A stretch of DNA of 43,137 nt from NCBI RefSeq assembly GCF_001194135.2, contig NC_068982.1, forward strand, positions 59,498,260 through 59,541,396, in the 5' to 3' direction. Source of the DNA: Octopus bimaculoides (Eukaryota). The notes under the pieces were generated by a model that was not told where the DNA came from, ran no database searches, and saw only the letters and a list, made by a program, of their open reading frames with translations. Of this stretch, positions 332 to 41,497 are shown one piece after another (position 1 is the stretch's first letter; the number at the start of each line of letters is the position of its first letter). A program made the translations under genes and the position numbers.

Positions 332-360
332 TATATAGATAGATAGATATGTATATATAC

Positions 361-540
361 ACGATGGGTTTCATTCAGTTTCCATCTACTAAATCCACTC
401 AGAAGGTTTTGGTCAGCCCAAAGCTATAGTAGATGATGCTTGCCCAAGGTGCCACGCAATGGGACTGTACCTGGAACTATATGGTTGGGAAGCAACCTTC
501 TTCCCACACATCCACTCCTGCACCTACACAGCCACTCCTG
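361..540 (-). mobile_element. tRNA-headed CORE-type octopus SINE (family A), 5' half
   Basis: Reverse complement matches the head and core of the full copies at 26308 and 35500 (…GTGGCACCTTGGGCAAG…). The first ~15 nt are tandemly duplicated at 526-540. Confidence 0.85.
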
Positions 541-2492: not shown

Positions 2493-2553
2493 GCAGACAG
2501 TATAACCTATCTATCTATCTATTATGTACGTATATATATATATATATATATAT

Positions 2554-2771
2554 AATCAAAATAAGCAACAGGATATCAAGAAGTGATGCAGTACAACCGT
2601 TTCAAGTGGCTCCATTTAATTGAACAATGCAATCATTACATCAATTTATTTGTGCAGCTGATGATAGCTCTGCATTTAAAGTGATGTAATGATTGCATTG
2701 CTCAATTAAATGGAGCTGCTTGAAACAGTCGTACTGCATCACTTCTTGATATCCTGTTACTTATTTTAATT
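2554..2771. repeat. Long fold-back palindrome (90-nt arms, 38-nt loop)
   Basis: 2554-2643 is the reverse complement of 2682-2771 with ~7 mismatches by hand count. Flanked by (TA)n at 2531-2553 and ~2857-2877. Confidence 0.95.
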
Positions 2772-3017
2772 TTATTCACCTTACTTTGAGTTGTACGGAT
2801 AATACCAGACTGACTTGGTGCTTCAGTTTAAGTACCTAATTCAACTGAATCTCAATTATATATATATATATATATAATATGAGGGGTTTTGATATCCAGA
2901 AGACCCAAGATGCAGGTTAGGCTATGTAAGTGCTACAGAAGGACTGCAGTTAGACTCCCGGTTCAATAATAGTGGGAGTGAAGAGTCTAATGCAGGTTGT
3001 GTGTAAGTGTATGTATG

Positions 3018-3178
3018 TTAAATGAAATGAGATAACAAGGCCAAGGCAGTGTGATATTTCTAGGATATTTATAAAGAGAAAGGTAGTCTTTCAGTTGTAA
3101 ACTGTAAGACTACCTTTCTCTATATAAATGTCCCAGAAATATCACATTGTTTTGACCTTGTTATCTCATTTTATTTAA
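3018..3178. repeat. Long fold-back palindrome (79-nt arms, 3-nt loop)
   Basis: 3018-3096 is the reverse complement of 3100-3178 with ~9 mismatches, 5 of them G.U-compatible on the + strand. Confidence 0.95.
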
Positions 3179-3474
3179 TATATATGTTAATCAATGAAAT
3201 TCCAACTTTGATTTTCATGTTTTAGTATTTGCAATTTTTACAATATTGAAATAAACTAGTACTTTCTTGTGTAACACAATTATCAGGTTTATGTTGTAAC
3301 AGTTGTGTTCCACAATTAACAACTGTAGTAAAATGGTTAGATTTATCCTTTAAATAACCTCTGATGGGCTCCAACAGGCTATATCTTATGAACTGTATTT
3401 TGACCAATCAGCATGTGGCTTAGATATCATGGTTTGGTGAGTGCACCAACTGAATTCTAACCGTATTTCAACCA

Positions 3475-4184: not shown

Positions 4185-4437
4185 CATACGTGCACACATA
4201 CTTGTTAAATATAGACACATAGCTTCTTTGATTTATAAGTACCTGACATCCAAAGCAGTCTTGGAGAAGGCACTGTAAAGATTATAGTTGTGTAGAAAGG
4301 CATGTATGATATAATCAATTACTAACGCAGTTGCCACTATTTATGTTATCATTGGCAGACTGACCCTCCCAAATTAATATAACAGAGAATGTACACACAT
4401 ATATATATATATATATATATGTATATACATAATACAT

Positions 4438-4779
4438 ATGTATATGCTCCGTTGGATGTGTAATGTCAATGTGAATACCCGTCAGAGTGTAAGTATCTTG
4501 AGAGAAAAGCTGAACATTAGAAGCATCAGTTGTGGCGTGCAAGAGAGACGATTGCGCTGGTATGGACATGTGGTGAGAATGGAGGAGGATAGCTGCGTGA
4601 AAAAGTGCCACACCCTAACAGTTGAGGGAACCCGTGGAAGAGGTAGGCCCAGGAAGACCTGGGCTGAGGTGGTGAGGCAAGACCTTCGTACATTGGGCCT
4701 CACCGAGGCGATGACTACTGACCGAGACCTTTGGAAATGTGCTGTGCGTGAGAAGACCCGGCAAGCCAAGTAAGATCGT
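4438..4779 (+). mobile_element. RTE-clade LINE ORF C-terminus, 5'-truncated, frame intact
   Basis: MLRWMCNV…ERRLRWYGHVVRMEE…GTRGRGRPRKTW…DRDLWK is the characteristic post-RT C-terminus of RTE/BovB-like LINEs. It starts at a (TA)n tract, stops at 4771-4773 and runs into a gap. Confidence 0.93.
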
Positions 4780-5648
4780 NNNNNNNNNNNNNNNNNNNNN
4801 NNNNNNNNNNNNNNNNNNNNNNNNNNNNNNNNNNNNNNNNNNNNNNNNNNNNNNNNNNNNNNNNNNNNNNNNNNNNNNNNNNNNNNNNNNNNNNNNNNNN
4901 NNNNNNNNNNNNNNNNNNNNNNNNNNNNNNNNNNNNNNNNNNNNNNNNNNNNNNNNNNNNNNNNNNNNNNNNNNNNNNNNNNNNNNNNNNNNNNNNNNNN
5001 NNNNNNNNNNNNNNNNNNNNNNNNNNNNNNNNNNNNNNNNNNNNNNNNNNNNNNNNNNNNNNNNNNNNNNNNNNNNNNNNNNNNNNNNNNNNNNNNNNNN
5101 NNNNNNNNNNNNNNNNNNNNNNNNNNNNNNNNNNNNNNNNNNNNNNNNNNNNNNNNNNNNNNNNNNNNNNNNNNNNNNNNNNNNNNNNNNNNNNNNNNNN
5201 NNNNNNNNNNNNNNNNNNNNNNNNNNNNNNNNNNNNNNNNNNNNNNNNNNNNNNNNNNNNNNNNNNNNNNNNNNNNNNNNNNNNNNNNNNNNNNNNNNNN
5301 NNNNNNNNNNNNNNNNNNNNNNNNNNNNNNNNNNNNNNNNNNNNNNNNNNNNNNNNNNNNNNNNNNNNNNNNNNNNNNNNNNNNNNNNNNNNNNNNNNNN
5401 NNNNNNNNNNNNNNNNNNNNNNNNNNNNNNNNNNNNNNNNNNNNNNNNNNNNNNNNNNNNNNNNNNNNNNNNNNNNNNNNNNNNNNNNNNNNNNNNNNNN
5501 NNNNNNNNNNNNNNNNNNNNNNNNNNNNNNNNNNNNNNNNNNNNNNNNNNNNNNNNNNNNNNNNNNNNNNNNNNNNNNNNNNNNNNNNNNNNNNNNNNNN
5601 NNNNNNNNNNNNNNNNNNNNNNNNNNNNNNNNNNNNNNNNNNNNNNNN
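4780..5648. other. Assembly gap. Other gaps: 7552-7651, 14936-14994, 16413-16593, 23758-24315, 26506-27255, 41556-41907
   Basis: Runs of N, most abutting (TA)n or (GT)n. Confidence 1.
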
Positions 5649-5694
<46 letters not shown>

Positions 5695-5704
5695 AGCTTG
5701 TCGC

Positions 5705-5895
5705 TGTTTGTCTCCCCACCATCACTTGACAACTGATGTTAGTGTGTTTATGTCCCCGTATCTTAGTGGTTCAGCAAAAGAGAACGATAGAATAAGTACT
5801 AAGCTTACAAAGAATAAGTCCTGGAGTGGATTTGTTCAATTAAAGGCAGTGCTCCAGCATGGCCACAGTCAAATTACCGAAACAAGTAAAAGAGT
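5705..5895 (+). mobile_element. Family A SINE, 3' half
   Basis: …TTGACAACTGATG…GATAGAATAAGTAC…CCAGCATGGCCACAGTCAAA…GAAACAAGTAAAAGAG matches the 3' half of the copy at 35500-35897. Confidence 0.88.
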
Positions 5896-7434
5896 ACATA
5901 TATTTAAAAAATCCAATAGACATAGAATCAGCAAAATTTGTGCTCCGTCTGTACATATACATTAGTGTGTGTTTGTGTTTGTGTTTGTCCCATCAATGTC
6001 GGTGAATTTACGACTGAAACAAATAAAAGAATAAAACAATGCCTGCAGAAAGTTATGCAGGGTACATATATGAGAAGCTAGAGAATACCATTTACATTGA
6101 CAAGAGTAATAGCCTCTCCTGGACTAGCAATAAGTATATCACATCTCATCTCAAAAACTGCACTCTTGCTATTCAAAAACGTATGATGACTACTAACTAC
6201 TTGATGAATGAGAATGATTAGAGTGCTTCTAGACCTCCACACAGCAATGGAAAGTGACAGTTTGAATCATACCAGGATAGAAGATATCTCCCATATCAAC
6301 AGCAACTTTCAAAAAATATTTACAAGATAGTACCATCATTTGAGACATGACACTCTCCTGACAGCCATAACTAAAGTCACACCAGAAGCAGAAAATATCC
6401 ATAATTTTAAGAATAAAGAACGCTAGTAGAACATTCCAACGAAAACAACAATAGGCTGGTCATTGTTGTAACTGGTCAGGGAACAGCTTAGTGGGTGTGA
6501 ACATCTCATCAAAAATTTTTAAAAATGAAAACATCGATGGTGAACCAATGAGAAACCAACAGTTCTTATATTCAGGTTATAGATTTTCATTTCTCCTTAT
6601 TATCATAAATTCACTGAACTATGTAACAACAGATCTGCATAAAAAAAAAAAATTAAAACACTGAGGTTCTCCAAAAGAGAACAAACAGGTTGATTTGCAT
6701 TCTTCAAATGCAATCTATGAGAGATACAAAGAAAAAATTCAAAACATTTCAAAGATTCTGTGGGAAACTTCTAGGTACACAGGCACACAATCAATATATA
6801 CATATGGAATACACATGCACACACATACATAAATAGTAATGAGACGACCCCAGTTGTCTCAACACAAAACGTTGTTTATTGTCATCCAATCTGTGGACAC
6901 AATTTGATTATGTGATGTTGATTATTTAAGCTCATGTTGATTCATCTGGAGAAAAACACATTATGGACTCTACCAGGTGACATAGATATATATTGGCTCA
7001 TTGTTGTGGATTGGCTCTTTTTGCCTTAGCACACTTATTGTGGTACAGACAATTTACTTTGCATCAGGGGTAAATTGAAATTACAATTCACCACTTCACA
7101 CTTCAGTTTCAAATTGTTGTAATATTTAGTTCGTTTTGTTATATTTTGAGTACAATATTATTCATCTTACTTTATAACAAGTAATGAAGTACACATACAG
7201 TTGTGGACTAACATATGTTCACCAACTACTTGAGTACAGGTTTATCAACATGCACTCACATACACAGCACACTTATAGTTATATGCATACCTCATTCAAT
7301 TCAGATAGCTACAAACCACAAGAGCTAACATGACTTGATTAAAAGAGCATCATTGTTTTGTTAGGGACCAGTCTGAATTCTACAGAAGAGAAAAAAATTT
7401 AAATAAATCCCAAAGTAGCATATATCTCATTTAT

Positions 7435-8111: not shown

Positions 8112-8552
8112 GATAATAATGATTTCAAATTTTTGTACAAAGCCAGGAATTTCAGGGGAGTGGTTAAGTTGATTACATCACCCCACCCCCGTCCTAGACT
8201 GGTACTTATTTTATCGACTCCGAAAAGATGGAAGGCTAAGTCAACCTCAGTGGAATGTAAACTCAGAACTTAAAGATGGACGAAATGCCGCTAAGCATTT
8301 CTGTCTGACATGGTAACAGTTCTGTCAGCACACCACTTTCCGAAGAATTATAATAATGATTTTAAATTTTTGTACAAGGCCAGCAGTTAAGTCAATTACA
8401 TTGATCCTGGTGTTCAACTGGTACTTATTTTACTAACTATGAAAGGATGAGAGGTAAAGTCAACCCTGGTGGTATTTGATCTCAGACCATGAAGGTGGAT
8501 GAAATGCCGCTAAGCATTTTCCCTGGCATACTAATAATTCTCCCTGCTTGCC
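8112..8552 (-). mobile_element. Two tandem Nin-domain-type tRNA SINEs (family B), minus strand
   Basis: Copies at ~8112-8337 and ~8350-8552 are each the reverse complement of GG(C/T)GGTGAGCTG…AAATGCTTAGCGGCATTTC…CATCCTTT…ATAAAATAAGTACCAG. Confidence 0.8.
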
Positions 8553-8800
8553 TTTTTATGATAATGATAAAAATTAACCGTGGTAAAGTGTTGAACAAAA
8601 TACATTACCATATTTTGTTGCATCCCTTTATGTTTAGGTTCAAATACTGCTGCTGTCAACTATGCCTTTCACATTTCCTGGGCCAATAAAATAAAGTATC
8701 AGTCATGTACTAGGGATGTGCTATCACTGACTGTTCTGTCTCCATAAATTATTTTTGGTCTCATATCTATGTATGAAATCAATATTATCAGTTGCTATAA

Positions 8801-9240
8801 GGCAGTGAGCTGTCAAAATCAGCATGCCGACCAAAATGCTTACTAGCATTTTGTCCATCTTCATGTTATGAGTTCAAATTCCATGAAGGTCCACTTTACT
8901 TTTAATCCTTACAAGTGGTCAATAAAATAAGTACTAGTTGAGCACATGGGTCAATGTAATCAACCTACCCCCTCCCAAAATGTCTGGCCTTGCAATATTA
9001 CCATTGCCATCTAAGGTGGTGAGCTGACAGAATCATTAGCACACCAGGCAAAATTCTTAGTGACATTTCGCCTGTCTCTACATTCCCAGTTCAAATTCTA
9101 CCAGGGTCGACTTAGCTCTTCATCCTTTTGGGAGTCAATAAAATAAGTATCAGCTGAGCACTGGGTTTTGATATAATTCTCTTACCCCTTGTCATGAACT
9201 TACTGGCCCTGTGCCAAAATTTGAAATGAATATCACCATT
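8801..9240 (+). mobile_element. Two tandem family B SINEs, plus strand
   Basis: Copies start at 8801 (GGCAGTGAGCTG) and 9015 (GGTGGTGAGCTGACAGAATC). Both have AGTTCAAATTC (B box) and AATAAAATAAGTA. Confidence 0.82.
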
Positions 9241-9680: not shown

Positions 9681-10030
9681 ACTAATGACAGCTTATCCTT
9701 TGGGAGACTGATAGTCTAAATAATCTCCCTGCAGTCATACAAAGTCCTGAATGTCTTCTATTTATCCCACTTATTTATATATGAACAATACAAAAGAGCT
9801 ATTAATTTTTACCCAACACTCTCACATTACCAAATCAGAATGACTCCTTAAGGCTATATATATATATTCAATTTTACACACCAATTAGAAGTAAGGAAAT
9901 AGGTAACCTGTATTGAAAATCTTGTTGTTTTGTCAATATTGAGCATAATTAAGTGTTCTATAATATACATAACAGAAGATATGGACAAGTTAAAGACAGT
10001 GTTTATAAAATATTTACATGAAGTAAATAT

Positions 10031-10430
10031 AGGTGAAGGCATGGCTGTGTGGTAAGACTTTTGCTTCCCGACCACATGGTTCTGGGTTCAGACCCACTGT
10101 GTTGCTCCTTGAGCAAGTGTTTTTTAGCCATAGCCTTGGGCCAACCAAAGCCTTGTGAGTGAATTTGGCAGATGGAAAGTAAAAGAAGCCCGTCATATAT
10201 GTACATACATACATATATATCTCTGTGTGTTTGTTCCCCACTACCACTTGACAACCAGTGTTGGTGTGTTTATGTCCTCATAACTTAACAGTTCAGCAAA
10301 GAAAACCAATAGAATAAGTGCCTGGCTTTAAAAAATAAGTACTGGGATTGATTAATTTGACTAAAATCCTTCAAGTTGGTGCTCCAGGATGGCTATAGTC
10401 TAATGACTAAAACAAGTAAAAGACAAAAGA
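10031..10430 (+). mobile_element. Family A SINE, full length, diverged
   Basis: Head GGTGAAGGCATGGCTGTGTGGTAAG, internal TA/TG microsatellite, tail GAAACAAGTAAAAGA. Confidence 0.9.
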
Positions 10431-10868
10431 TAATATTTTTTTCCACTGCTTAGTCACAGAAAAAAGGGCCATAAACACTTTTAACAATGGATTTTGCTAA
10501 TGACATTTAAGGACCTGGTTGGCTTCAGCAGTGATATCAATGTCATTGTAATTATCATCATTATTACTGAGAATAAAACAGGATATATAATTCTCAGAGC
10601 ACAGAGTTAGTAGCCAGATACTGAGCACATGAAAGAGCCTCTCTGTGGTTGGTTAATTTATAAAAAAATTGCAGCTGAATCTTCAAATCATACACTTAGC
10701 AAGGAGTGAGCCATCAAGTCATTTTTGACCCATTGGAAGTAGTAGCCAAATTTCTTTAAAATTACAGCCTACCACCTTAAAAAGGAAGGACATTTTGGAT
10801 AATTAATCAAAAATACAATCAAAAGATTTCTGGTTCTTGTTGAAATGTCTTTGCTCATAAATTTGCAT

Positions 10869-11188: not shown

Positions 11189-12479
11189 ATCTACAAGATT
11201 AAGACTGATTTGGGTCTCAAGAAGAACAGTAAATATAATCATATTTAGTAATTTCAGCAAGATGTTCAGTTTTCAAGTACAATCCTATTCATGTTAGTGA
11301 GGCCAAAATGGATTTCTTAAAAAAATCCAGTAAAAGAAAACAACAAAAATATGAACAAAACCTATATATATATAATTGGTCTTTATCGAATGATGAAGAA
11401 CATGGTAAAATTTTCTTCTAATGCTATGTAGTCCTCTATCATTATATTTACTCTGGATTGACAGCAGATATGCAATAACTGGCCTGTAGTAGAATCACTT
11501 TAATCCTTATGAAATATTGCTATATAACAATCTGATAATTTGTTGGATAAATATTCGATAGAAGTAATTGCAAATAATTAATTAAGGTCAAGTTCTTTGG
11601 AAGATATTTTGGCAGTTGTTCTAACATTGATAAATAAAATGACTTTGTGGTAGGGAGAAGATGAAAACATGAGGTGAGTGAAAGTCTGACCGAAAATAGG
11701 AAATTAATATTCATAATGAGAAAGAAAAGAAAAATTAAATACCATCTTCATCAACATCATTGTTGTTGTCATTATCACCATCATTGTCATCATCATTATC
11801 ATTATCAATAGAAACAATACTAAATTATGAAATGCTGCAGGATCTATGAAAATAAGTATAACAGTAGTGTAATACTTGATATACATAATTATACACTTCA
11901 TCTAATTATACTGCATAACACGATTTTTGTCCTTGGGTAGCAGCTGTTATATCCTATTTGCTCACCCTTTAAAAGTATGAAAAATGGTTAATATTTCCTT
12001 CAAACTTTTCTTTTGTTACATTTATTCAAATGCCAAAAAATCCCTCTCAATGCATGGCTATGATGCTTCCCCACTGCTCCAGCTTATGGCCAGAGATGCA
12101 CATATTGCTAGCCACTAAGGGGCATGCTCAAGGGGTTAAAGTCAAGCATCTGACAAGCAAATCTGTGGTAATGAGAAGAATATTTGCTATAACAATATTT
12201 TAACGATATTTATGCTTCAGCAACTCAGTGCTGAATCTGTCTGAAATGTAATGGAAAATAGGTCAGCTTGAAAACGCTGAATATCCAGGTCATGAAAGCA
12301 GAGTTTGAAGGGAATAATAGTAATTTCCTTTGACTTCTAGATAGAAGCAAACAGGAAATAACATTTACTGACTAAAGACAAAAATATAAATATTTTGTTA
12401 TGCAATTTTATCATAGCTGTCTAATATAGAAAATCCTTCATACTTTTATAAATTTGACACATTGTTACTGAAAGATTAA

Positions 12480-12699
12480 ACCTTTAGCATTTAAACCGAC
12501 CATATCCAGCCCAAATATTCTACATGTTTTATGTTCAAACTGGCCGTGTGTGGTCTCTCACAACTGCCCTACAATAACATCTTAAAAATATACAATCACC
12601 TCCTCAAAATCTCAAAGCTACGAGAAAATGCTTGACTAATTGAAACCATCATGAATAAATAAGCATTATATTTGATAGACTAATCTGAATGTTAAAGGG
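12480..12699. mobile_element. TTAA-flanked piggyBac-like MITE (220 bp)
   Basis: TTAA(12476-79)-aCCTTTAGCATT … AATGTTAAAGGG-TTAA(12700-03). Same family as the host element at 37657-39191. Confidence 0.85.
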
Positions 12700-12904
12700 T
12701 TAAATGTAGCCAATTGTTATCCAAGGGACTTTCACCCATCATAGTTGTTTTCACTGACAAATACCCTCTCATATATCTACTACACATATATCTCTTACAG
12801 CAAATTCTGTTAATAAAATATCTTGCATAACACTCAATCTTTCATTCAATAGGTGCAGCTGTTTAAGCACTTTGGAATCCATCTGAAAATGTCTCTGATT
12901 CTGT

Positions 12905-15285: not shown

Positions 15286-15380
15286 AAAGTGATTAAAATT
15301 CATACTTTATAATCTATCCCACTATAAAATTTCATAGCTAAGAGAAATCTCCGCCACCAAAAAAATTATAAGGTAAATAT

Positions 15381-15564
15381 AGGCACAGGCATGGCTGTGT
15401 GGTAAGAAGCTTGCTTCCCAAACACACAGTTTCAGGTTCAGTCTTGCCGCATGGCACCTTGGGCAAGTGTCTCCTGCTATAACCTCAGGCCGACCAAAGC
15501 CTTGTGAGTGGATTTGGCAGACAGAAACTGAGAGAAGTCCGTCGTGTGTGTGTGTGTGTGTATG

Positions 15565-15618
<54 letters not shown>

Positions 15619-15835
15619 TGTGTTTGTCCCTCATCGCTGCTTGACAACTGATATTGGTGTGTTTATATCCCTGTAACTTAGCAGTCCAGCAAAAGAGACC
15701 AATAGAATAATTACTAGGCTTTAAAAAAGAAACATCCTGGGCCGACTTGTTTGACTAAAAAAAAACTCTTCAAAGCAGTGCTCCTGCATGGCCACAGTCA
15801 AATGATTAAAACAAGTAAAAAAATAAAAAAAGAAT
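15381..15835 (+). mobile_element. Family A SINE, full length
   Basis: Head GGCACAGGCATGGCTGTGTGGTAAG, core GGCACCTTGGGCAAGTGTC, expanded internal (GT)n, standard tail. Confidence 0.92.
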
Positions 15836-24315: not shown

Positions 24316-24356
<41 letters not shown>

Positions 24357-24388
24357 CATATATATATATATTTATACATATATATGCG

Positions 24389-24596
24389 CATGTGTGTGTG
24401 TTTGTGTCTGTGTTGGTCCCCTCACCAATGCTTGATAACCAATGTTGGCGTGTCTATGTCCCCGTAACTTACCAGTTCGGCCAAAGAGACTGATAGAATA
24501 AGTACTAGGCTTACAAAGAATAAGCTCTGGGTGTCGATTTGTTTGACTAAAGGTGGTGCTCCAGCATGGCCACAGTCAAATGACTGAAAGAATAAA
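24389..24596 (+). mobile_element. Family A SINE 3' half
   Basis: Standard 3' half downstream of (TA)n and the gap. Confidence 0.88.
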
Positions 24597-25014
24597 TGAA
24601 CATATATATAAAGAAAGAAATAATTATTATTATCATCATTGCCACTCATGATGATGATGATAATAATAATGATAATTATAAAAGCAATAATAGAAAAGGA
24701 TTTTAACAGCAGCAGTGTCAATAACAAAGTGATAAGATTGATAGACACAGAGAGCTATGACAATAGCAATGACAGCAAATTAATACGATATCAACATCAT
24801 CATCAACAGCAACAACAATGGTTTTAACAGCAGTAGATAAAATGCAACAACAACTACAAAAATGCTAACAGCATCGTTCCTGATAGCAAGGAGGCAAAAA
24901 AAAAAAGTATATATATATATATGTGTGTAATTTTTCATTAATATCATTGAAATATATTCAGCAATGATGGAGACTTAATGTCTGCTGTCACAAAGTCCTG
25001 AGTAATTGTGGGAG

Positions 25015-25500: not shown

Positions 25501-26307
25501 AATGAAATTCTGATGCAACCAACCACCAACAATTGCACTGTGAGTTTCCTTCTGCTGCCAATATGTAACAAAAGTCATATGCCTTAAAGACCACTACAGG
25601 ATTTTATAGTAAGCTACCAGCACTGTAAATGTCATATTTTTGATGAATTCTCAGTTGGTGTGAAAGTAGAATTTGAATTTTGATAGTCTCACAAAATATT
25701 TGTTTCCTAGTGCTCTTTTGATGTTTGTGATTTTAACAACAATGAAGTGGCAATATTTAGCTTGTCACTGGTTGAAAGATTAAAATGCAATGAGAAATAT
25801 TTTAAAGCAATTGTTTTTGTTTTTGCTATTGCTGTTGTTACTGGTGGTGGGGGGGGCAGCATTATTATTGTTGTTGCTGTCATGTGAGTTTTCTTCTAGA
25901 ATAACAATGGATTTTTAGTTATGAAGCCCCCCCCCGCCTCATTAAATCTATGATTTCTGTCTTTGATGCATGATACAATCTTCATACAAGACAACAGATA
26001 TACCGCAATAAATAGTCTGACCTTCTGTATTTACCCTCTATAATGCTGCATAAGATTGAAAATACAGATTTGTCTTATACCTGCAATAATTGCTTTGTTG
26101 ATTTTCATCTCACATCTATTTTCCCACGTTGGCATAAGATGGATGAAAACTTACTGAGACAGTATTTTAAGACTAGACACCAGTGGCATTATGATGGTTG
26201 CTGTATTGGATGTGCTGCCACACCCAATGCCACCAAATTCCAGGCAGGGGTATAACAAAAGTTTTCCATAAAGATTTGTGATTAAATTAATGAGTAAAGT
26301 TAATATA

Positions 26308-26472
26308 GGCGCAGGAGTGGCTGTGTGGTAAGTAGCTTGCTTACCAACCACGTGGTTCCAGTTTCATTCCCACTGCGTGGCACCTTGGGCAAGTGTCTCC
26401 TACTATAGCCTCGGGCCAACCAAAGCCTTGTGAGTGGATTTGGTAGACGGAGACTGAAAGAAGCCCATCATA

Positions 26473-26505
<33 letters not shown>

Positions 26506-27255: not shown

Positions 27256-27314
<59 letters not shown>

Positions 27315-27530
27315 ATACGTTTGTGTACCTGTGTTTGTCCCCCCAGCATTGCTTGACAACCGATGTTGGTGTGTTTACGTCCCCGTAACCTAGTGGTTCG
27401 GCAAGAAAGACCGATAGAATAAGTACTAGGCTTCCAAAGAATAAGTCCTGGGATCGATTTGCTTGACTAAAGGCGGTGCTCCAGCATGGCCACAGTCAAA
27501 TGACTGAAACAAGTAAAAGAGTAAAAGAGT
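26308..27530 (+). mobile_element. Family A SINE, full length, internal microsatellite collapsed into a gap
   Basis: Head GGCGCAGGAGTGGCTGTGTGGTAAG at 26308; tail AAGTAAAAGAGTAAAAGAGT at 27530. Confidence 0.92.
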
Positions 27531-27781
27531 ATTTATTATGAATTTGCCATTTTCAATGGGTGTGCATTGCATACCTAGCACACCCAGAATATATGTCCCT
27601 GCTTGTTTTCAAGCAAGGGTAGGTCTTTTCTTTTAGTTCCACTTGGTTTTAAAAGCATATTGTTATAGGACATAGTGTTCATTGGAAAAGTAAACATGAC
27701 AATGCTATTTTGATTGAACAAAGGCATGCAAACATGCAGAATCTAAACAGTCTTACCTGCATACATGCATACACACACATT

Positions 27782-28342: not shown

Positions 28343-28434
28343 AGGAGTGGCTGTGTAGTGTCTTCTACTATAGCCTCAGGCCAACCAAAGCTTTGTGAGT
28401 GGATTTGGTAGACAGAAAATGAAAGAAGCCCGTC

Positions 28435-28518
<84 letters not shown>

Positions 28519-28737
28519 GTATATGTTTGTGTGTCTGTGTTTGTCCCCCAAACATCGCTTGACAACTGATGCTGGTGTGTTTATGTCCTTGTCACTTAGC
28601 GGTTCGGCAAAAGAGACGGATAGAATAAGTACTAGGCTTACAAAGAATAAGTCCTGGGGTCGATATGCTCGACTAAAGGCGGTGCTCCAGCATGGCCACA
28701 GTCAAATGTCTGAAACAAGTAAAAGAGTAAAGAGAGT
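28343..28737 (+). mobile_element. Family A SINE with deletion of most of the tRNA head
   Basis: GGAGTGGCTGTGT joins AGTGTCTTCTACTATAGCC, followed by a long (TA)n and the standard tail. Confidence 0.9.
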
Positions 28738-28747
28738 ATATCAACAG

Positions 28748-29028
28748 CCTTTTTGCCAAACTGCTAAGTTACAGGGACATAAACACACCAACACCAGTTG
28801 TCAAGCGGTGGTGGTGGACGAACACAGACACACACACATGCAAAAATATATGTATACGTATATTTGATGGGTTTCTTTTTATTTCCATCTACCAAATCCA
28901 CTCACAAGGCTTTGATTGGCCTGAAGCTATAGTAGAAGACACTTGCCCAAGGTGTCATGCAATGGGATTGAACCCAGCACTATGTGGTTGAGAAACAGGC
29001 TTCTTGCCACAGAGCTGTGCTTGCACCT
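28748..29028 (-). mobile_element. Family A SINE, minus strand, 3'-truncated
   Basis: Reverse complement of head, core and part of the 3' half. Confidence 0.88.
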
Positions 29029-34914: not shown

Positions 34915-35267
34915 CACTGGTTCTCAACCGGGGTCCATATAAGATATTTTGGGGTCTGCATAAACAAAATGGTAAAATGGGAGTTCACAGAAGTATTTTA
35001 GGGATTCATGAAAACATTTTTTGCAGAAAGCAACGAGGTTTCTTTAATACTTAACATGGTTCAACATGTATCAAGCCACTGAAGCAAGTTATCTCTGAGA
35101 ATGCTATCGCAAAATTACACAAGTGAATGCATGAAAAACAAAACAGGAATTTTGTAAGAATTATCTTTAAAGCTGGTTTTTAAACATGGAATAGCTACTG
35201 GGGTCCACCAGAGTAAAACAGTAGTAAAACTGAGTCGAAATGTTAAAAAAATGGTTGAAAACCACCA
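34915..35267. mobile_element. hAT/Charlie-like MITE, second copy
   Basis: CACTGGTTCTCAACC … GGTTGAAAACCAC. Colinear with 10869-11188, with an extra ~50-nt segment near 35060-35115. Confidence 0.78.
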
Positions 35268-35289
35268 CTCTAAGCAATCACATAACCTG

Positions 35290-35362
35290 TTAGAAATAAC
35301 AGCCAAATCTATTAAATTACACCTGACTTTTTTTAAAAAAGAAAGGATATGTTTGACAGTAT
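35290..35362 (+). repeat. Short dispersed module GAAATA(A/G)CAGCCAAATCT… (also ~10738, ~37408, ~38575)
   Basis: Four similar 25-70 nt copies within the window; family unknown. Confidence 0.55.
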
Positions 35363-35499
35363 CCAAAATATGAATATGCAAAAAGGACAGAATGCTTATG
35401 GTTAGAATCTTTTTTGATTATATATAACTTCTTAATCAGGGTTTCTGAGATAGCTAAGCAACAAGCAGATGTTGTCACACCAAAGTGTTTAGGACTATA

Positions 35500-35897
35500 G
35501 GCGCAGGAGTGGCCGTGTGGTAGGTAGCTTGCTAACCAACCACATCATTCTGGGTTCAGTCCCACAGCATGGCATCTTGGCAAGTGTCTTCTATTATAGC
35601 CTTGAGCCGACCAAAGCCTTGTGAGTGGATTTGGCAGACAGAAACTGAAAGAAGCCCGTCGTATATATGTATATATATATCTGTGTGTGTGTTTGTGTGT
35701 CTGTGTTTGTCTCCCTAACATTGCTTGACAACCGATGCTGGTATGTTTATGTCCCCTTAACTTAGCAGTTCAGCAAAAGAGATCGATAGAATAAGTACTT
35801 ACAAAGAATAAGTCCCGGGGTCAATTTGCTCGACTAAAGGCGATGCTCCAGCATGGCCGCAGTCAAATGACTGAAACAAGTAAAAGAGTAAAAGAGT
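35500..35897 (+). mobile_element. Family A SINE, full length, best-preserved copy
   Basis: Complete head (A/B boxes), CORE-like GCATCTTGGCAAGTGTC, short internal TA/TG and tail (GTAAAAGA)2. Confidence 0.93.
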
Positions 35898-37656
35898 TAT
35901 CAGAAGCTGTATCACTGCAACAAATTTTGATTTGCATTCCCTAACTCTAACCCTAACCATTTCTAATAGAGATACAAGGCCATCAATTTGTAGGGAAGAA
36001 ATAGTTAATTATATCAACTCCAGCACTTGATTTGCACTTTATTTTAATGACCCTATCAGAATGAAAAATAAAATTAACCTTAGAGGCATTTTAACACAAG
36101 ACACAAAGAACTGACAAGGTTGTGCACTTATTGTTCTTTTTGTGCTCTTTCCATGAAATCACTTCAATAACTGCTACTTTTCCCACGTAATTCTTCAAAT
36201 TAATTCATGAAAAAATTACTCCTCTGCATGGAATTTGGTCATAAATTGTGCTTCAGGCCTTCTAAATATAGGAAAGAGCAGAAGACGACTGGCTGAAAAC
36301 TTCTGTTAAAACTCCAAGTTTGTCATAGATTTTTAGATTAATGCTTTCTTGCCTGAATTTGATATCCTTTGTGAACATTTACGTCTGATTCTTCCTTTTG
36401 CTTGCCAATACCATCTCAAGGAGTCTTATCAGAAACAATGTTTAAATAGTTTTACATTGTACTTCTTTTGCAAAATTGTCACATAACACATCTGGTTTAT
36501 GTGATCCTACATCTTAGTACTTATGTAATCTTTTACATCATGTATGTTTATTCTATGTTAGTCTTGCACTAAATCTCTTATGACTACTCTTATTAAATAG
36601 TTCATACATTTTAGTCCCCTGTAACTTATGTTGCTAAAGTATCAGAGGCCAAGATAATTAATATTATTATTTTTATTAATAAAGAAAATACTTATTGTTA
36701 TTATCATCTTTATTTTCATCATTATCATTATTTATTACCATCATAATCATCAACATCAATATAATCATTATAACATTTTAGCAAAACCTATTATGTTTAC
36801 AAAATTTATTTCTCTTCTTAATTTCCCTCTAGATTTATATGTTAGACAGATATGGCGTTTAGCAGTTTAAATGCCATCATTCTACGTAATAAATGAAGTT
36901 AATAAATTCTATGTCATTTTCAATAATGTATGTAATTTCAAGTTTTGAATCTGGTTAGCTTATGTGGATAGGAAATCTAATAGGGAAATAACAGTACATA
37001 TCCTTTCAAAATTACATCATATCTGATATCGTAAAATATTGTGGGAAAATGTAAAGGAAAATGTATTTTAACATATGCTTCTCAGAACTTGGATCAAATG
37101 TTGTAAATTATGCTTAGTAAAGTGGGTGAGAAAAAAATGACACTTCTTTAAGTTACTGTAAAAATATTACCAAATGATCTACTGCTAAGATATATTTGAA
37201 AAAGTGTTTAAGAGAGCCACAAATGATTTAGAATGATATAGAAAAAATATTCCAGGGAAAATGTAAACTATATGAGTTGGGTGGCCACTTGTTTTTAACT
37301 TTATGAGACAATGTATATGAAATATATAAAAGTTGTTTTGTTGTGGTGGCCCTGATATTACAAACTGAAGCTTACAAAAGTCATTGAAGATTGGTAATTA
37401 AACTTGCTAAAAATAGCAGCTAAATCTCCCCTTTATTCCACTTTACTTTTTCAAAAATTTCACTCCACACTTATAAGTCATGGGCTTAATCCTGCTATAT
37501 GGCACTGTGAACAAATATCTTTATCATAATTTTGGATTACATCCAAACCTGTGATAGACACTGCATAGAAGCCCATTGGACTGATTTTACCAGTAATTCA
37601 AAATTCTGTCTTTAGAGCATATTGTGCCATGCTGATTTGGCTTAGAACCATATTAA

Positions 37657-39191
37657 CCTTTTAGCATTTAAACTAGCCATATCCAAACCAAACACTCTAC
37701 TTGTTGGATCTTTTCAATCTCAGTCACAGATTTTTTAATTATTTTTTTTTAACTAAACTGTTTGAAACTTCGGACACTGGTTGAATGTTTCACATAGAAC
37801 ACGGTTTACTCTTCATGTTTTTGACAAAAGTTTGTATTTTAGAAGTTATTTCATGTTAAAGTTGTCATATTTGTGTAATTTTAACCAATCAGTGATGTGT
37901 ATTCACCTGAAGAAAGTTACTGCTGTTTGCAAAAGTTATGGAAGAGTGACAACATCTGGGTCATCGGGTCATCTGTTTTGGACACTGCATACATATATGT
38001 ACGTAAATACACAGACACTTGTATACGTATACACACACACACACACACCAATACATATACACACATGCAACTCATAGAATGCTGAGGAAAGGAAGGGAGG
38101 TGGGTGTGAGGAATACATAGCTTTAAGGAGGAAGGGGGATTGTGAAGTTGACGTCAGTTGTTCATGCAGCGTTTCTGCTGTCCATCACACACACACACAC
38201 ACACACACACACATTCATATGTAAAGCTGATAAAACCCCGAATGGGAGCAAGGAAAAGGTGAGGGTTTAATAAATTAATATGCAGTGGTGGGGGATTGCT
38301 AAGTTTATATAAGCTGTCGTTCAGATTGTCAACACACCACTACTCTCTCCTTTCTCTCTCTCCCTCCCTCTCTCTCTCTCACTCTCTCTTTCTCTTTACG
38401 ATTTGTCACATTAAAAAAATCAGGGGCAATCGCTGAACGAGTTAACTGAAAACGATTAAAATGTGTATTTGTGTGTATGTACATGTCTGTAAGTGTATGT
38501 GTGTATGTATGCATGTATGTATGTATGTATGTGTGTGAGAAAATGTGAGAATCTGTATAGTTACTTGACCTGCTGGAAATAATAGCCAAATCTCAATGTC
38601 ACACGCTAACATTAAATAAACAAGAGGACACATTGGATAAGATGAAAAAAAATACACACACACACATACACGTATGTATTCCCTATAAAAAAACTTTCTA
38701 TTTTTCTCAACCACATTTCTTATCTTTTATACTTTTCGCTCACCTGTCTCTCTCTCTCTCTCTCTCTCTCTTTCAATGACCCAGAAGTTGTTGCTCTTCC
38801 ATTACTTTTGCAAACAGCAGTAACTTTCTTCAGCTGAATGCACATCACTAATTGGTTGAAATTGCCCAAATACGACATCCTTAACACGAAATAACTTCTA
38901 AAATACAAAATTTTGTCAAAAACGTTAAGAGTAAACCATGTTCTACGTGACACATTCAACCAGTATCCAAAGTTTCAAACTGTTTAGTTAAAAAAAAATT
39001 CATTAAAAAATCTGTGACTGAGATTGAAAGGATCCTACTTGTTTTAGGTTCAAACTGACCAGATATAGCCTCTAACTGCTACTCTACAATGTCATTCTAA
39101 AATGTCATCAACGTCTTGAAGCTGTGATTAATTCAAAGCAATGTGAATAAGCAAGAATTACACTTGACAGAATAACCCGAATGCTAAAGCA
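37657..39191. mobile_element. TTAA piggyBac-like MITE split by a nested insertion
   Basis: TTAA(37653-56)CCTTTTAGCATT … AATGCTAAAGCA-TTAA(39192-95). The left 49 bp plus the right 148 bp rejoin to match 12480-12699. Confidence 0.88.
37706..39035. mobile_element. Non-autonomous long-TIR element (Mutator/Foldback-like), 1330 bp
   Basis: TIRs at 37706-37964 and 38776-39035 (~260 bp, ~90% identical by hand count). Termini GGATC…GATCC. TSD TACTTGTT at 37698-37705 and 39036-39043. Confidence 0.88.
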
Positions 39192-39245
39192 TTAATAGTA
39201 CACATGTCAGTAAAACACTCAGCAACTTATATATTAATTCAAAAT

Positions 39246-39967: not shown

Positions 39968-41422
39968 AGTGGTAGGGTGAGATTTGAAGGAGTTTTGACT
40001 GGTATTTCTAGCAGACCAAAGGAATGCTTAGAATGCTTCCATCTTGGCTCATTGACTACAGTTAGCTGGAGGTGGGATTACTAATCAACAACAGAAACAA
40101 CAAAAACTGCTGGTGGTAATCTCTCTAAAAATAATATTATTACTGTTGTTGAACTCATGAAAATGATGTCAATTTTTTTCTCTCCCATATAATCAATCAG
40201 CTCTCTACCCACTTATAATAAAGCTTTCCATATTATATCAATAATGCTGCTACCAAGCATCTATCATGATCTTATATAGTACTTCACATCGACAAGGTTT
40301 GCCAACAAATTTCCTCACCTTATTCTACACCTACATTATTTCTGATATCTTAATCTTTCACTGGAAACTTAACTGATCAGATATGTGAGCAGGTAAAAGT
40401 TCTTGACAATTTATTTTGCCAAAATTTCAATGAGATTCATTCTTGCTCACATCTCCCTTGAGGTTCTACTGACACTCTGCCATGCCTGTAATTGTTATTG
40501 CACAGAAGCCAGTTTTGTGAGCAAGAAACGAGAATATAGTATGGCTGTGATAGTGCAAGAGATGTAGGTGTTGAGAGAAAAACACACACACACACACACA
40601 CACGCAAACACACACACACAAACATACATTCATACACATACACTAAGTTATTGAGTACTGAGAATATTTGGTCATTTAGAGAAAAAAAAATGTCACAACT
40701 AGCCTCATGCTTTTCACTACTTGGATGCCAAGAAAGCTGTGAAGACATTGTTCATTGACTCCTTGTCTACTCATCTACTATCTTCTTTATTTTCAATTGC
40801 TTCTTAGGTAATATGTGCAAAGGATATAGGACAATTATGGTTGACTGCTTAGAAGAGAAATAATCTCTTCATCTGGGAGAATAAAAGTAACCAAATGCTG
40901 TTTATAATGTGCTGTATCCAACACTGGCTCATGGCATTGTATGTGTATGCGTGTGTGTATGTGTGTGTGTGTGTGCGTGTGTGCATATGTATGTATGTAT
41001 GTGTGTGTTCACATATATATGTGTGTGTGTGTGTGTGTGCGTGCGTGCTTATGCACATGCACATATAAATGTTAAACTGAAGTTACTATACTAAAACAAC
41101 TTAGAAACTAACAAAGGAATATTTACTGTTGGAGAACTCAATACTGAGTACAGACTCAAATTTATTGTAAAATTTATTTCCAATGGGATTTTAAATTTCA
41201 TCTTTTCTTTTTCACTAATTAAATAACTTGTTAGGTTATACATATATATATTAAATTCAAATTACGACAAACGTAAATAAACAAACGAAGTTTGCTTTTA
41301 GAAGCGTTGAGATGTCCTTTAGAAAGTTAAAGAAGTGATTTTAAATTCTCAATCGCAGAATAATGCTAATAATATAGCCTGAACAGGATAAATTATCCCT
41401 ATTTTGTAGAGAAAAGTGTAGG

Positions 41423-41497
41423 TGGCTAGCTGTGGACTCAAACTCACATCCCCGTGATTACATGTCACGATGCTTTGACCGATTAAGCTAAGCTACC
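41423..41497 (-). pseudogene. tRNA-Thr(TGT)-like pseudogene / tRNA-derived head
   Basis: GGTAGCT TA GCTT-aatcggtca-AAGC A TCGTGA-caTGTaa-TCACGG GGAT GTGAG-TTTGAG-TCCAC AGCTAGCCA. Cloverleaf with an acceptor bulge, TTTGA instead of TTCGA and a flawed T-stem. Confidence 0.65.

What the first reader, a model, noticed from the sequence alone, without database searches (positions are those of the whole stretch)
37653..39195. Russian-doll transposons: long-TIR cargo-carrying element nested in a TTAA MITE
Seen: an intact outer TTAA TSD and TIRs, and an inner 1330-bp element with ~260-bp TIRs, GGATC termini and an 8-bp TSD (9 bp if one terminal C is counted). The empty-site version is available in the same window (12480-12699). 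The 811-bp interior has no transposase ORF. It is a patchwork of microsatellites, unique purine-rich sequence and a copy of a dispersed genomic module (38575). Established: long TIRs starting with G plus 8-11-bp TSDs typify Mutator/Foldback elements, and Pack-MULEs capture host DNA in plants. Inference: a Pack-MULE-like element in a cephalopod, which also folds into a 260-bp dsRNA stem.
Basis: partly seen in the sequence, partly recalled or inferred. Interest (0 to 1): 0.7.

Follow-up and report, generated by a model that had tools for sequence, protein, structure and literature searches.

The report
Merlin transposon nested in TTAA MITE
A 1.3-kb protein-less DNA transposon with 260-bp inverted ends sits inside a smaller TTAA-flanked transposon in an octopus-type genome; its ends tie it to the Merlin (IS1595-like) superfamily, not Mutator, so it is an ordinary nested transposon and not a gene-capturing Pack-MULE.

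Summary
The structure is real. The inner element is window 37706-39035 (1330 bp). Its inverted arms are 37706-37964 and 38776-39035 (234/259 identical), its termini are GGATC, and it is flanked by a perfect 8-bp duplication, TACTTGTT. Removing it plus one duplicate leaves a 205-bp TTAA-flanked MITE that aligns end to end with a paralogous uninterrupted copy at 12476-12703.

The Mutator/Pack-MULE reading is not supported. GG termini, 8-9-bp duplications and TIRs of 24-462 bp are the published hallmarks of Merlin. I fetched one Octopus bimaculoides contig solely because it encodes a Merlin transposase (L001, Pfam DDE_Tnp_IS1595). It holds:
- a 710-bp relative of the window element, with arms 80% identical to the window TIR (E 7.5e-46), the same GGATC ends and an unambiguous 8-bp duplication;
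- an element end ...AAAGATCC 546 bp downstream of the transposase stop codon, 85% identical over about 93 nt to that relative's arm.

The 811-bp interior has no ORF with a Pfam match. It consists of microsatellites, two tandem copies of a degenerate ~156-bp unit, and about 105 bp of an abundant dispersed repeat. No host-gene capture is detectable.

Verdict: a new member of a known kind, of low interest. Weak points: only one related locus was reachable, and its transposase copy lacks a left end.

The parts
37653..37656 (.). Left TTAA target-site duplication of the outer MITE
   Evidence: Sequence read directly; TTAA also flanks the paralog at 12476-12479.
37657..37697 (+). Left part of the outer TTAA-type (piggyBac-like) MITE, up to the inner element's TSD
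   Evidence: Aligns with 12480-12520 of the paralogous copy; terminal CCTTTTAGCATT is inverted at the right end.
37698..37705 (.). Left copy of the 8-bp target-site duplication TACTTGTT of the inner element
   Evidence: identical to 39036-39043. The paralog has a single TACATGTT at the equivalent place.
37706..37964 (+). Left terminal inverted repeat of the inner Merlin-type element (starts GGATCTTTTCAATC)
   Evidence: 234/259 identical to the reverse complement of 38776-39035. Positions 39-222 are 80% identical to L001 6071-6254, E 7.5e-46.
37965..38775 (.). 811-bp non-coding interior of the inner element
   Evidence: No ORF with a Pfam hit. Microsatellites at 38031-38048, 38186-38213, 38343-38395, 38462-38537 and 38747-38771.
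38029..38342 (+). Two tandem copies of a degenerate ~156-bp unit: (CA)n head, purine-rich stretch, then GGGGGATTG..AAGTT..
   Evidence: the repeat finder families D4 and D5, spacing 156. Global alignment score is 71 against a shuffle mean of -22 (sd 12); without the microsatellite head it is 34 against -12 (sd 10).
38560..38665 (+). About 105-bp piece of an abundant dispersed repeat (core GACCTGCTGGAAATAATAGCCAAATCTC ... GGACACATTGGATAA), with an A-rich/(CA)n tail
   Evidence: Matches window 10712-10830, 35265-35380, 37402-37428, 39985-40014(-) and L001 5481-5573 at about 70-88%.
38776..39035 (-). Right terminal inverted repeat of the inner element (ends ...GATTGAAAGGATCC)
   Evidence: 79% identical to L001 6071-6254.
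39036..39043 (.). Right copy of the 8-bp target-site duplication TACTTGTT
39044..39191 (+). Right part of the outer MITE
   Evidence: Aligns with 12529-12699 of the paralog.
39192..39195 (.). Right TTAA target-site duplication of the outer MITE
12476..12703 (+). Paralogous, uninterrupted copy of the outer MITE with its own TTAA flanks; it serves as the 'unfilled' reference
   Evidence: End-to-end alignment with the outer element minus the inner element and one TSD copy: 156 matches and 48 mismatches, 76.5%.

Best explanation
The inner 1330-bp element (37706-39035) is a non-autonomous member of the Merlin superfamily of cut-and-paste DNA transposons.

**How it moves (inferred).** It encodes nothing. 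It would be mobilised in trans by a DDE transposase of the IS1595/IS1016 type (Pfam DDE_Tnp_IS1595) made by autonomous Merlin copies elsewhere in the octopus genome. That enzyme would recognise the GGATC-initiated ends, excise the element, and insert it with a staggered cut that is repaired into an 8-bp duplication.

**What happened here (shown).** This copy landed inside an older ~205-bp MITE flanked by TTAA. The TTAA target and CCYTTT termini suggest the MITE is piggyBac-type.

**The TIRs.** Only about the outer 100 nt of the 260-bp arms resemble the end of the transposase-bearing element. The remaining ~160 nt of each arm is specific to the MITE lineage.

**The interior.** The 811-bp interior is decayed, non-coding filler: microsatellites, a tandem duplication of a ~156-bp unit, and a fragment of an abundant dispersed repeat. 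That fragment is most simply a nested or partial insertion, not captured host-gene cargo.

**Status of each step.**
- Shown: the anatomy, the TSD, restoration of the outer MITE, and the homology chain to a Merlin locus.
- Inferred: trans-mobilisation, the piggyBac assignment of the outer element, and the origin of the interior.

**Age (inferred).** The arms are about 10% diverged. The element is therefore probably old and immobile: up to about 15 Myr if the arms were identical at insertion, using the Jukes-Cantor scale quoted in PMC13282606.
For: 1. **Anatomy.** 260-bp TIRs at 90% identity, GG termini and a perfect 8-bp TSD.
2. **Published Merlin definition.** TIRs of 24-462 bp, conserved terminal 5'-GG, TSDs of 8 or 9 bp; O. 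bimaculoides has the most Merlin transposase hits among the bilaterians surveyed, 191 (PMC8101967).
3. **Homology test.** O. bimaculoides Merlin proteins from that paper's supplement were used as query. This returned P0052, which scores 62.7 bits on PF12762 against a cut-off of 27. Its contig L001 was fetched only because it carries that gene.
   - L001 5575-6284 is a 710-bp MITE with GGATCTTT...AAAGATCC ends and an 8-bp TSD, TAACGTTG. Its arms match window TIR positions 39-222 at 80% over 184 bp, E 7.5e-46.
   - L001 ends an element at ...AAAGATCC (4602), 546 bp after the transposase stop codon. The terminal ~93 nt of that end are 85% identical to the MITE's left arm (z = 20; blastn 88% over 59 nt, E 3e-17). 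Beyond that it diverges from the MITE arms, as expected for an autonomous partner rather than another MITE arm.
   - The first 9 nt, GGATCTTTT, are identical between the window element and that end.
4. **Outer element.** Removing the inner element and one TSD copy restores a MITE that is collinear with its paralog.
5. **No coding content.** No interior ORF has a Pfam hit, and there is no Merlin transposase remnant in the window.
6. **Nesting order.** The outer copies are 23.5% diverged from each other and the inner arms 10%, which fits the inner element being younger.
Against: - Only one related locus could be reached, so the Merlin link rests on one contig.
- The transposase-bearing copy in L001 has no recognisable left TIR. 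There is only an 18-nt inverted match at 2677-2694 (E 0.04) next to a (GT)n tract. That the GATCC end at 4602 belongs to the same element as the ORF is therefore inferred from position and from its divergence from MITE arms, not from a complete TIR pair with a TSD.
- Direct similarity between the window TIR and that end is weak (64-66 of 94-95 nt, z 2.6-3.7). The link runs through the intermediate MITE.
- Mutator elements can also have G-initial long TIRs and 8-9-bp TSDs (the TSD range is from my own knowledge). They are about six times more abundant by bases than Merlin in O. vulgaris (PMC13282606 Table S1).
- The piggyBac assignment of the outer MITE rests only on TTAA and the CCYTTT termini.
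Confidence: 0.8

Rival explanations
1. One reading: a Mutator-like (Pack-MULE-like) or Foldback element that has captured host DNA between long TIRs.
For: - Long G-initial TIRs, and an 8- or 9-bp TSD that overlaps the MULE range.
- Mutator is more abundant than Merlin in O. vulgaris: 55 against 18 families, 13.9 against 2.2 Mb.
- The two copies available enclose unrelated interiors.
- The interior holds a piece of a dispersed repeat.
Against: - The homologues found lie on a contig selected for a Merlin (DDE_Tnp_IS1595) transposase and share its element end.
- The TSD is unambiguously 8 bp in the relative.
- The TIRs are not built of subrepeats, as Foldback arms are.
- No host-gene fragment, ORF or Pfam domain is in the interior.
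Confidence: 0.07
2. A Merlin-type element that did acquire foreign DNA, either by transduplication or gap-repair template switching ('Pack-Merlin'), or by two nearby MITE ends mobilising the DNA between them. On this view the interior is cargo and not decay.
For: - Related TIRs enclose entirely different interiors: 811 bp here, and about 270 bp with telomere-like inverted repeats in L001.
- The window interior contains the same dispersed module that lies immediately outside the L001 MITE, which is inserted into it.
Against: - The module occurs at least five times in 43 kb, so nesting or adjacency by chance is expected.
- Interiors of MITE subfamilies 20% diverged normally differ.
- No gene-derived sequence is present.
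- The sample is only two copies.
Confidence: 0.1
3. A member of another superfamily with 8-bp TSDs (hAT, P, Zisupton), or not a transposon at all (a local inverted duplication).
For: The 8-bp TSD is shared with hAT and P; this rests on my own knowledge of those superfamilies.
Against: - GG termini and a 260-bp TIR do not fit the hAT (YARNG) or P termini; this also rests on my own knowledge.
- Precise restoration of the host MITE, the perfect TSD, and a homologous element with its own TSD in another contig rule out a local rearrangement.
Confidence: 0.03

Closest known systems
Merlin superfamily DNA transposons and their MITEs (Feschotte 2004, as summarised in PMC8101967); related to bacterial IS1016/IS1595
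   Same: Terminal 5'-GG, an 8-bp TSD, and a TIR length (260 bp) inside the published 24-462 bp range. The termini are shared with an element end next to a DDE_Tnp_IS1595 gene in O. bimaculoides. Internal tandem repeats are also reported in some Merlin copies (the Sy.k_F2 family has a 163-bp repeat; PMC8101967).
   Different: This copy carries no transposase. Only the outer ~100 nt of its arms resemble the putative autonomous end; the inner ~160 nt are lineage-specific. A complete autonomous partner with both ends was not recovered.
L001 5575-6284, a 710-bp MITE in O. bimaculoides contig LGKD02092233.1
   Same: GGATCTTT ends, an 8-bp TSD, and arms 77-80% identical to the window TIR over 100-184 bp.
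   Different: Its interior is unrelated (about 270 bp with a degenerate (TTAGGG)n array and its inverted complement). Its arms are about 71% identical to each other, so it is an older or more decayed copy.
Pack-MULEs of plants (Mutator-like elements carrying host gene fragments)
   Same: Long TIRs around a non-transposase interior.
   Different: Different superfamily on the evidence here. No host-gene fragment was detected, and the TSD is 8 bp, not the usual 9-11.
piggyBac-type MITEs (for the outer element)
   Same: TTAA target duplication, short TIRs beginning CCY, size of about 200 bp. piggyBac is a major DNA-transposon group in O. vulgaris (36 families, 15.6 Mb).
   Different: No transposase partner was examined. 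Kolobok also uses TTAA, so the assignment is provisional.
Tandem-repeat-containing MITEs of molluscs (e.g. Donax trunculus DTC84, cited in the PMC13282606 supplement)
   Same: A microsatellite plus short tandem repeats between inverted ends.
   Different: Only two degenerate units are present here. Those bivalve elements have short ends and are allied to Helentrons (PMC7492417 abstract), with no 8-bp TSD.

Membership tests
Merlin superfamily | TIRs begin with 5'-GG | tested here: met
   GGATCT... and, reverse-complemented, GGATCC.... The criterion is from PMC8101967.
Merlin superfamily | 8- or 9-bp target-site duplication | tested here: met
   TACTTGTT on both sides. The relative in L001 has TAACGTTG on both sides, and the 9-bp reading fails there.
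Merlin superfamily | TIR length within 24-462 bp | tested here: met
   259-260 bp, 90% identical.
Merlin superfamily | Autonomous partner with the same termini encoding a DDE_Tnp_IS1595 transposase | tested here: inconclusive
   L001 carries a PF12762 ORF (62.7 bits). An element end, GGATCTTTT... in reverse complement, lies 546 bp downstream and is 85% identical over ~93 nt to the arm of a MITE that is 80% identical to the window TIR. The left end of that copy is missing, and only one locus was available.
Mutator / MULE | TSD typically 9-11 bp (8-10 in some animal and fungal families; from my own knowledge) | tested here: inconclusive
   8 bp in both copies seen, which is at the edge of the range.
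Mutator / MULE | Autonomous partner encoding a MULE (MuDR-type) transposase with the same TIRs | not tested
The only partner evidence found points to Merlin.
Pack-MULE / transduplicating element | Interior made of fragments of host genes with identifiable parental loci | tested here: not met
   No interior ORF has a Pfam match, and there is no parental locus in the window. A genome-wide nucleotide search was not possible.
Foldback elements | Long arms built of tandem subrepeats, with little or no middle domain | tested here: not met
   TRF finds no subrepeat array in the arms, only a period-8, 2.7-copy repeat at the inner edge. An 811-bp middle domain is present.
piggyBac-type MITE (outer element) | TTAA target-site duplication | tested here: met
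   TTAA at 37653-37656 and 39192-39195, and at both ends of the paralog.
piggyBac-type MITE (outer element) | Short TIRs starting CCC/CCY, and a piggyBac transposase partner | tested here: inconclusive
   The termini are CCTTTTAGCATT / rc TGCTTTAGCATT; the paralog has ACCTTTAGCATT / rc CCCTTTAACATT. No partner was examined, and Kolobok is not excluded.

The most novel reading that the evidence does not exclude
The most novel reading not excluded is that Merlin-type elements in octopus pick up and shuffle foreign DNA between conserved long TIRs (a 'Pack-Merlin'). The resulting ~260-bp perfect-stem hairpins, when transcribed from introns or UTRs, would serve as ADAR or small-RNA substrates in a lineage known for massive RNA editing. 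The evidence leaves this open only because the two related copies have unrelated interiors and one interior contains a fragment of another repeat.
Probability: 0.08. Interest if true: 0.5.

Novelty: new member of a known kind. Interest (0 to 1): 0.2.

Why it matters
Mostly as annotation. It shows that a long-TIR element which looks like a MULE by eye belongs to Merlin, a superfamily known to be unusually rich in Octopus bimaculoides. It also supplies a TIR/TSD signature (GGATC..., 8 bp) for classifying some of the 'unclassified TIR' repeats in octopus genomes.

Nested DNA transposons give relative insertion ages. Long inverted repeats are potential dsRNA sources in cephalopod transcripts.

Nothing here changes what is known about how transposons work.

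Tried and rejected
1. **TIR pseudo-ORF as a probe.** I searched the 5.8-billion-protein collection with the fortuitous 68-codon reading frame that is open in both TIR arms, hoping gene callers had translated other copies. There were no hits, so that frame is chance and not a coding remnant.
2. **Metagenome scans.** Two exact-pattern scans of metagenome contigs, with 22- and 28-nt blocks conserved between the arms, found nothing.
3. **Other protein look-ups.**
   - P0047 and P0073 (other O. bimaculoides Merlin proteins) and the window's own retrotransposon ORF are not on record as called genes.
   - P0056 gave an ENA contig (L002) from an unrelated organism with no similarity to the window.
4. 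**Left TIR of the L001 Merlin copy.** Only an 18-nt inverted match was found (E 0.04).
5. **Palindromy beyond the TIR.** I tested whether the interior is a degenerate continuation of the palindrome. Only microsatellite complementarity, (AC)n against (TG)n, was found.
6. **Region 8113-9233.** I asked whether it is a second long-TIR element. It is four SINE-like copies, two forward and two reverse.
7. **Rfam and ARAGORN.** Nothing in or near the element.
8. **O. vulgaris repeat paper.** It holds no consensus library as text.
Full report
**Observation**

The region was read directly and analysed with the repeat finder, pairwise alignment and self-BLAST.
- The inner element spans window 37706-39035 (1330 bp).
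- Its arms, 37706-37964 and 38776-39035, are inverted copies: 234 of 259 aligned positions are identical, with 15 transitions (6 in CpG context), 10 transversions and a K2P distance of 0.104. Self-BLAST gives E about 1e-96.
- The ends read GGATCTTTTCAATC... and, reverse-complemented, GGATCCTTTCAATC...
- The element is flanked by TACTTGTT at 37698-37705 and 39036-39043.
- A 9-bp reading (CTACTTGTT) is formally possible if the last C is given to the flank, but that breaks the symmetry of the ends.

**The outer element**

TTAA lies at 37653-37656 and 39192-39195. After deleting the inner element and one TSD copy, the remaining 205 bp align end to end with 12476-12703, which has its own TTAA flanks. 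There are 156 matches and 48 mismatches (76.5%), and the alignment runs uninterrupted through the insertion point: TCTACTTGTTTTAGG against TCTACATGTTTTATG.

That second copy is a paralog, not an orthologous empty site. It still shows that the inner element is an insertion into a pre-existing MITE. No other copy of the long TIR exists in the window.

**The interior (37965-38775)**

- No ORF is longer than about 90 codons, and those present are microsatellite-derived with no Pfam match.
- TRF finds (AC)9, (CA)14, a (CT)n tract, a (TGTA)n tract and (TC)12.
- The 'unique purine-rich sequence' is part of a ~156-bp unit present twice in tandem, at 38029-38184 and 38185-38342. The alignment score is far above shuffles even without the microsatellite head.
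- The 'dispersed module' near 38575 is real but diverged. About 105 bp (38560-38665) align at about 70-88% with window 10712-10830, 35265-35380, 37402-37428 and 39985-40014(-), and with L001 5481-5573.
- At five or more copies in 43 kb, the module belongs to a very abundant repeat. SINEs make up 11.7% of the O. vulgaris genome (PMC13282606). A nested or partial insertion is therefore the simplest explanation for its presence.
- Beyond the TIRs, the only self-complementarity is (AC)n against (TG)n.

**Host**

The window is non-coding and repeat-dense, with seven N runs.
- A non-LTR retrotransposon ORF2 tail at 4378-4770 has its best named match, at 80% identity, in an Octopus vulgaris protein on a 100-Mb chromosome record.
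- The TIR and SINE-like repeats match an O. bimaculoides contig at 70-80%.

An octopus or close relative is therefore well supported. The species was not determined.

**Which superfamily**

The literature check changed the picture.
- Merlin elements are defined by TIRs of 24-462 bp, a conserved terminal 5'-GG and TSDs of 8 or 9 bp. O. bimaculoides had the most Merlin transposase hits (191) among the bilaterians surveyed (PMC8101967).
- Both Mutator (55 families) and Merlin (18 families) occur in O. vulgaris (PMC13282606 Table S1). Structure alone therefore cannot decide.

No cephalopod nucleotide database was available, so I used an indirect test.
1. I took O. bimaculoides Merlin protein sequences from the supplement of PMC8101967 and aligned them.
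2. I spent the last protein search on that alignment.
3. One hit, P0052 (LOC106883699, 277 aa), had DNA on record: contig LGKD02092233.1, 8016 bp, fetched as L001. P0052 scores 62.7 bits on PF12762 DDE_Tnp_IS1595 against a cut-off of 27.

This contig was chosen only for its transposase gene. It nevertheless contains two homologues of the window TIR.

First homologue: L001 5575-6284 is a 710-bp MITE.
- Its ends are GGATCTTTGGGG...CCCCAAAGATCC.
- It is flanked by TAACGTTG on both sides. The 9-bp reading fails here (A against C), which fixes the family TSD at 8 bp.
- Its arms match window TIR positions 39-222 at 80% over 184 bp (E 7.5e-46) and 77% over 103 bp.

Second homologue: an element end 546 bp after the transposase stop codon.
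- It reads ...AAAAAAGATCC, ending at 4602. Its reverse complement starts GGATCTTTT, identical to the first 9 nt of the window element.
- Its terminal ~93 nt are 85% identical to the MITE's left arm (z = 20 against shuffles; blastn 88% over 59 nt, E 3e-17).
- Further in, it diverges completely from all MITE arms. That pattern is expected of an autonomous partner's end, not of another MITE arm.

The chain is therefore: window TIR, to the L001 MITE, to the end next to the Merlin gene.

**Weaknesses of this link**
- The L001 transposase copy has no recognisable left TIR. Only an 18-nt inverted match remains at 2677-2694 (E 0.04), abutting a (GT)n tract.
- Direct similarity between the window TIR and the L001 end is weak (z about 3).
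- Only one locus could be examined. Other O. bimaculoides Merlin proteins have no contig on record, and a more distant hit came from an unrelated organism.
- No MULE locus was examined.

If the family had 10,000 copies in a 2.7-Gb genome, the chance expectation of a copy in a given 8-kb contig would be about 0.03. Finding two related pieces in the first Merlin contig inspected is therefore meaningful. I put about 0.8 on Merlin.

**Mechanism**
- Shown: a non-coding element with long inverted ends inserted with an 8-bp duplication into an older TTAA-flanked MITE.
- Inferred from knowledge of DDE cut-and-paste transposons and of Merlin/IS1595:
  - mobilisation in trans by a DDE_Tnp_IS1595 transposase that recognises the GGATC-initiated ends;
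  - a staggered 8-bp cut at the target, filled in by repair.
- There is no Merlin coding remnant in the window (tblastn).
- The 10% divergence between the arms suggests an old, probably immobile copy. The outer MITE family is 23.5% diverged between its two copies, which fits the nesting order.
- The outer element is provisionally piggyBac-type, based on the TTAA target and CCYTTT termini. The criterion rests on my own knowledge; Kolobok is not excluded.

**The Pack-MULE claim**

This claim fails on two counts: the superfamily is not Mutator on the evidence above, and no host-gene fragment is detectable. That is expected between subfamilies 20% apart and does not show capture.

**The dsRNA stem**

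The stem follows trivially from the TIRs. The predicted structure pairs the arms along their whole length (MFE -538.7 kcal/mol). There is no evidence of transcription.

**Verdict**

This is a correctly observed nested transposon that was assigned to the wrong superfamily. It is a new member of a known kind and of low general interest. It has some annotation value for octopus 'unclassified TIR' repeats.

Noticed in passing
window 8113-9233 (also L001 7601-7814): Looks like an element with 400-bp TIRs, but it is four copies of a ~210-bp SINE-like repeat with tRNA-like motifs (GGTGGTGAGCTG..., GTTCAAATTC). Two copies are forward (8113-8323, 8350-8541) and two reverse (about 8780-8993, 8993-9233).
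   Followed up: partly
window 332-526, 5649-5896, 10028-10430, 15378-15828, 24316-24599, 26304-26489, 27256-27532, 28357-28739, 28751-29011, 35496-35893: At least ten copies of a 250-450-bp dispersed repeat, 72-89% identical. Many abut (TA)n/(CA)n microsatellites and assembly gaps (N runs at 4780, 23758, 26506 and others). It is probably a major SINE family and the cause of the gaps.
   Followed up: no
window 10712-10830, 35265-35380, 37402-37428, 39985-40014(-), 38560-38665; L001 5481-5573: A conserved module (core GACCTGCTAGAAATAGCAGCCAAATCTC, then ...GGACACATTGGATAA, then an A-rich or simple-repeat tail) recurs. In L001 the related Merlin MITE is inserted inside a copy of it; in the window a copy lies inside the Merlin element. 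Its parent repeat family was not identified.
   Followed up: partly
window 2550-2775 and 3011-3185: Two near-perfect hairpins 235 bp apart: arms of 110 nt and 86 nt, 87% complementary, with loops of 6 and 3 nt. They may be small foldback MITEs.
   Followed up: no
window 4378-4770 (+): C-terminal fragment of a non-LTR retrotransposon ORF2 (...LRWYGHVVRM...GRGRPRKTW...). It is 80-81% identical to an ENA contig protein and to an Octopus vulgaris hypothetical protein, and is cut off by an N run at 4780.
   Followed up: partly
window 41424-41497 (-): The Rfam tRNA model scores 30.8 bits, just above the gathering score of 29, but ARAGORN calls no tRNA. It is probably a tRNA-derived SINE head or a pseudogene.
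   Followed up: no
L001 5888-6022: The interior of the related MITE holds a degenerate (TTAGGG) array of about 9.5 units, followed by its inverted complement (CCCTAA-like). This puts telomere-type repeats at the centre of a hairpin element.
   Followed up: partly
window 37766-37969 (+) and 38775-38974 (-): The same reading frame stays open for about 68 codons in both TIR arms (78% amino-acid identity). It has no homologue in the protein collection and no Pfam hit, so it is treated as chance.
   Followed up: yes
L001 275-884 and 1374-1988: Two further MITE-like inverted-repeat elements upstream of the Merlin gene in the O. bimaculoides contig, with arms of 77 nt at 97% and about 230 nt at 81-86%. 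Neither was classified.
   Followed up: no
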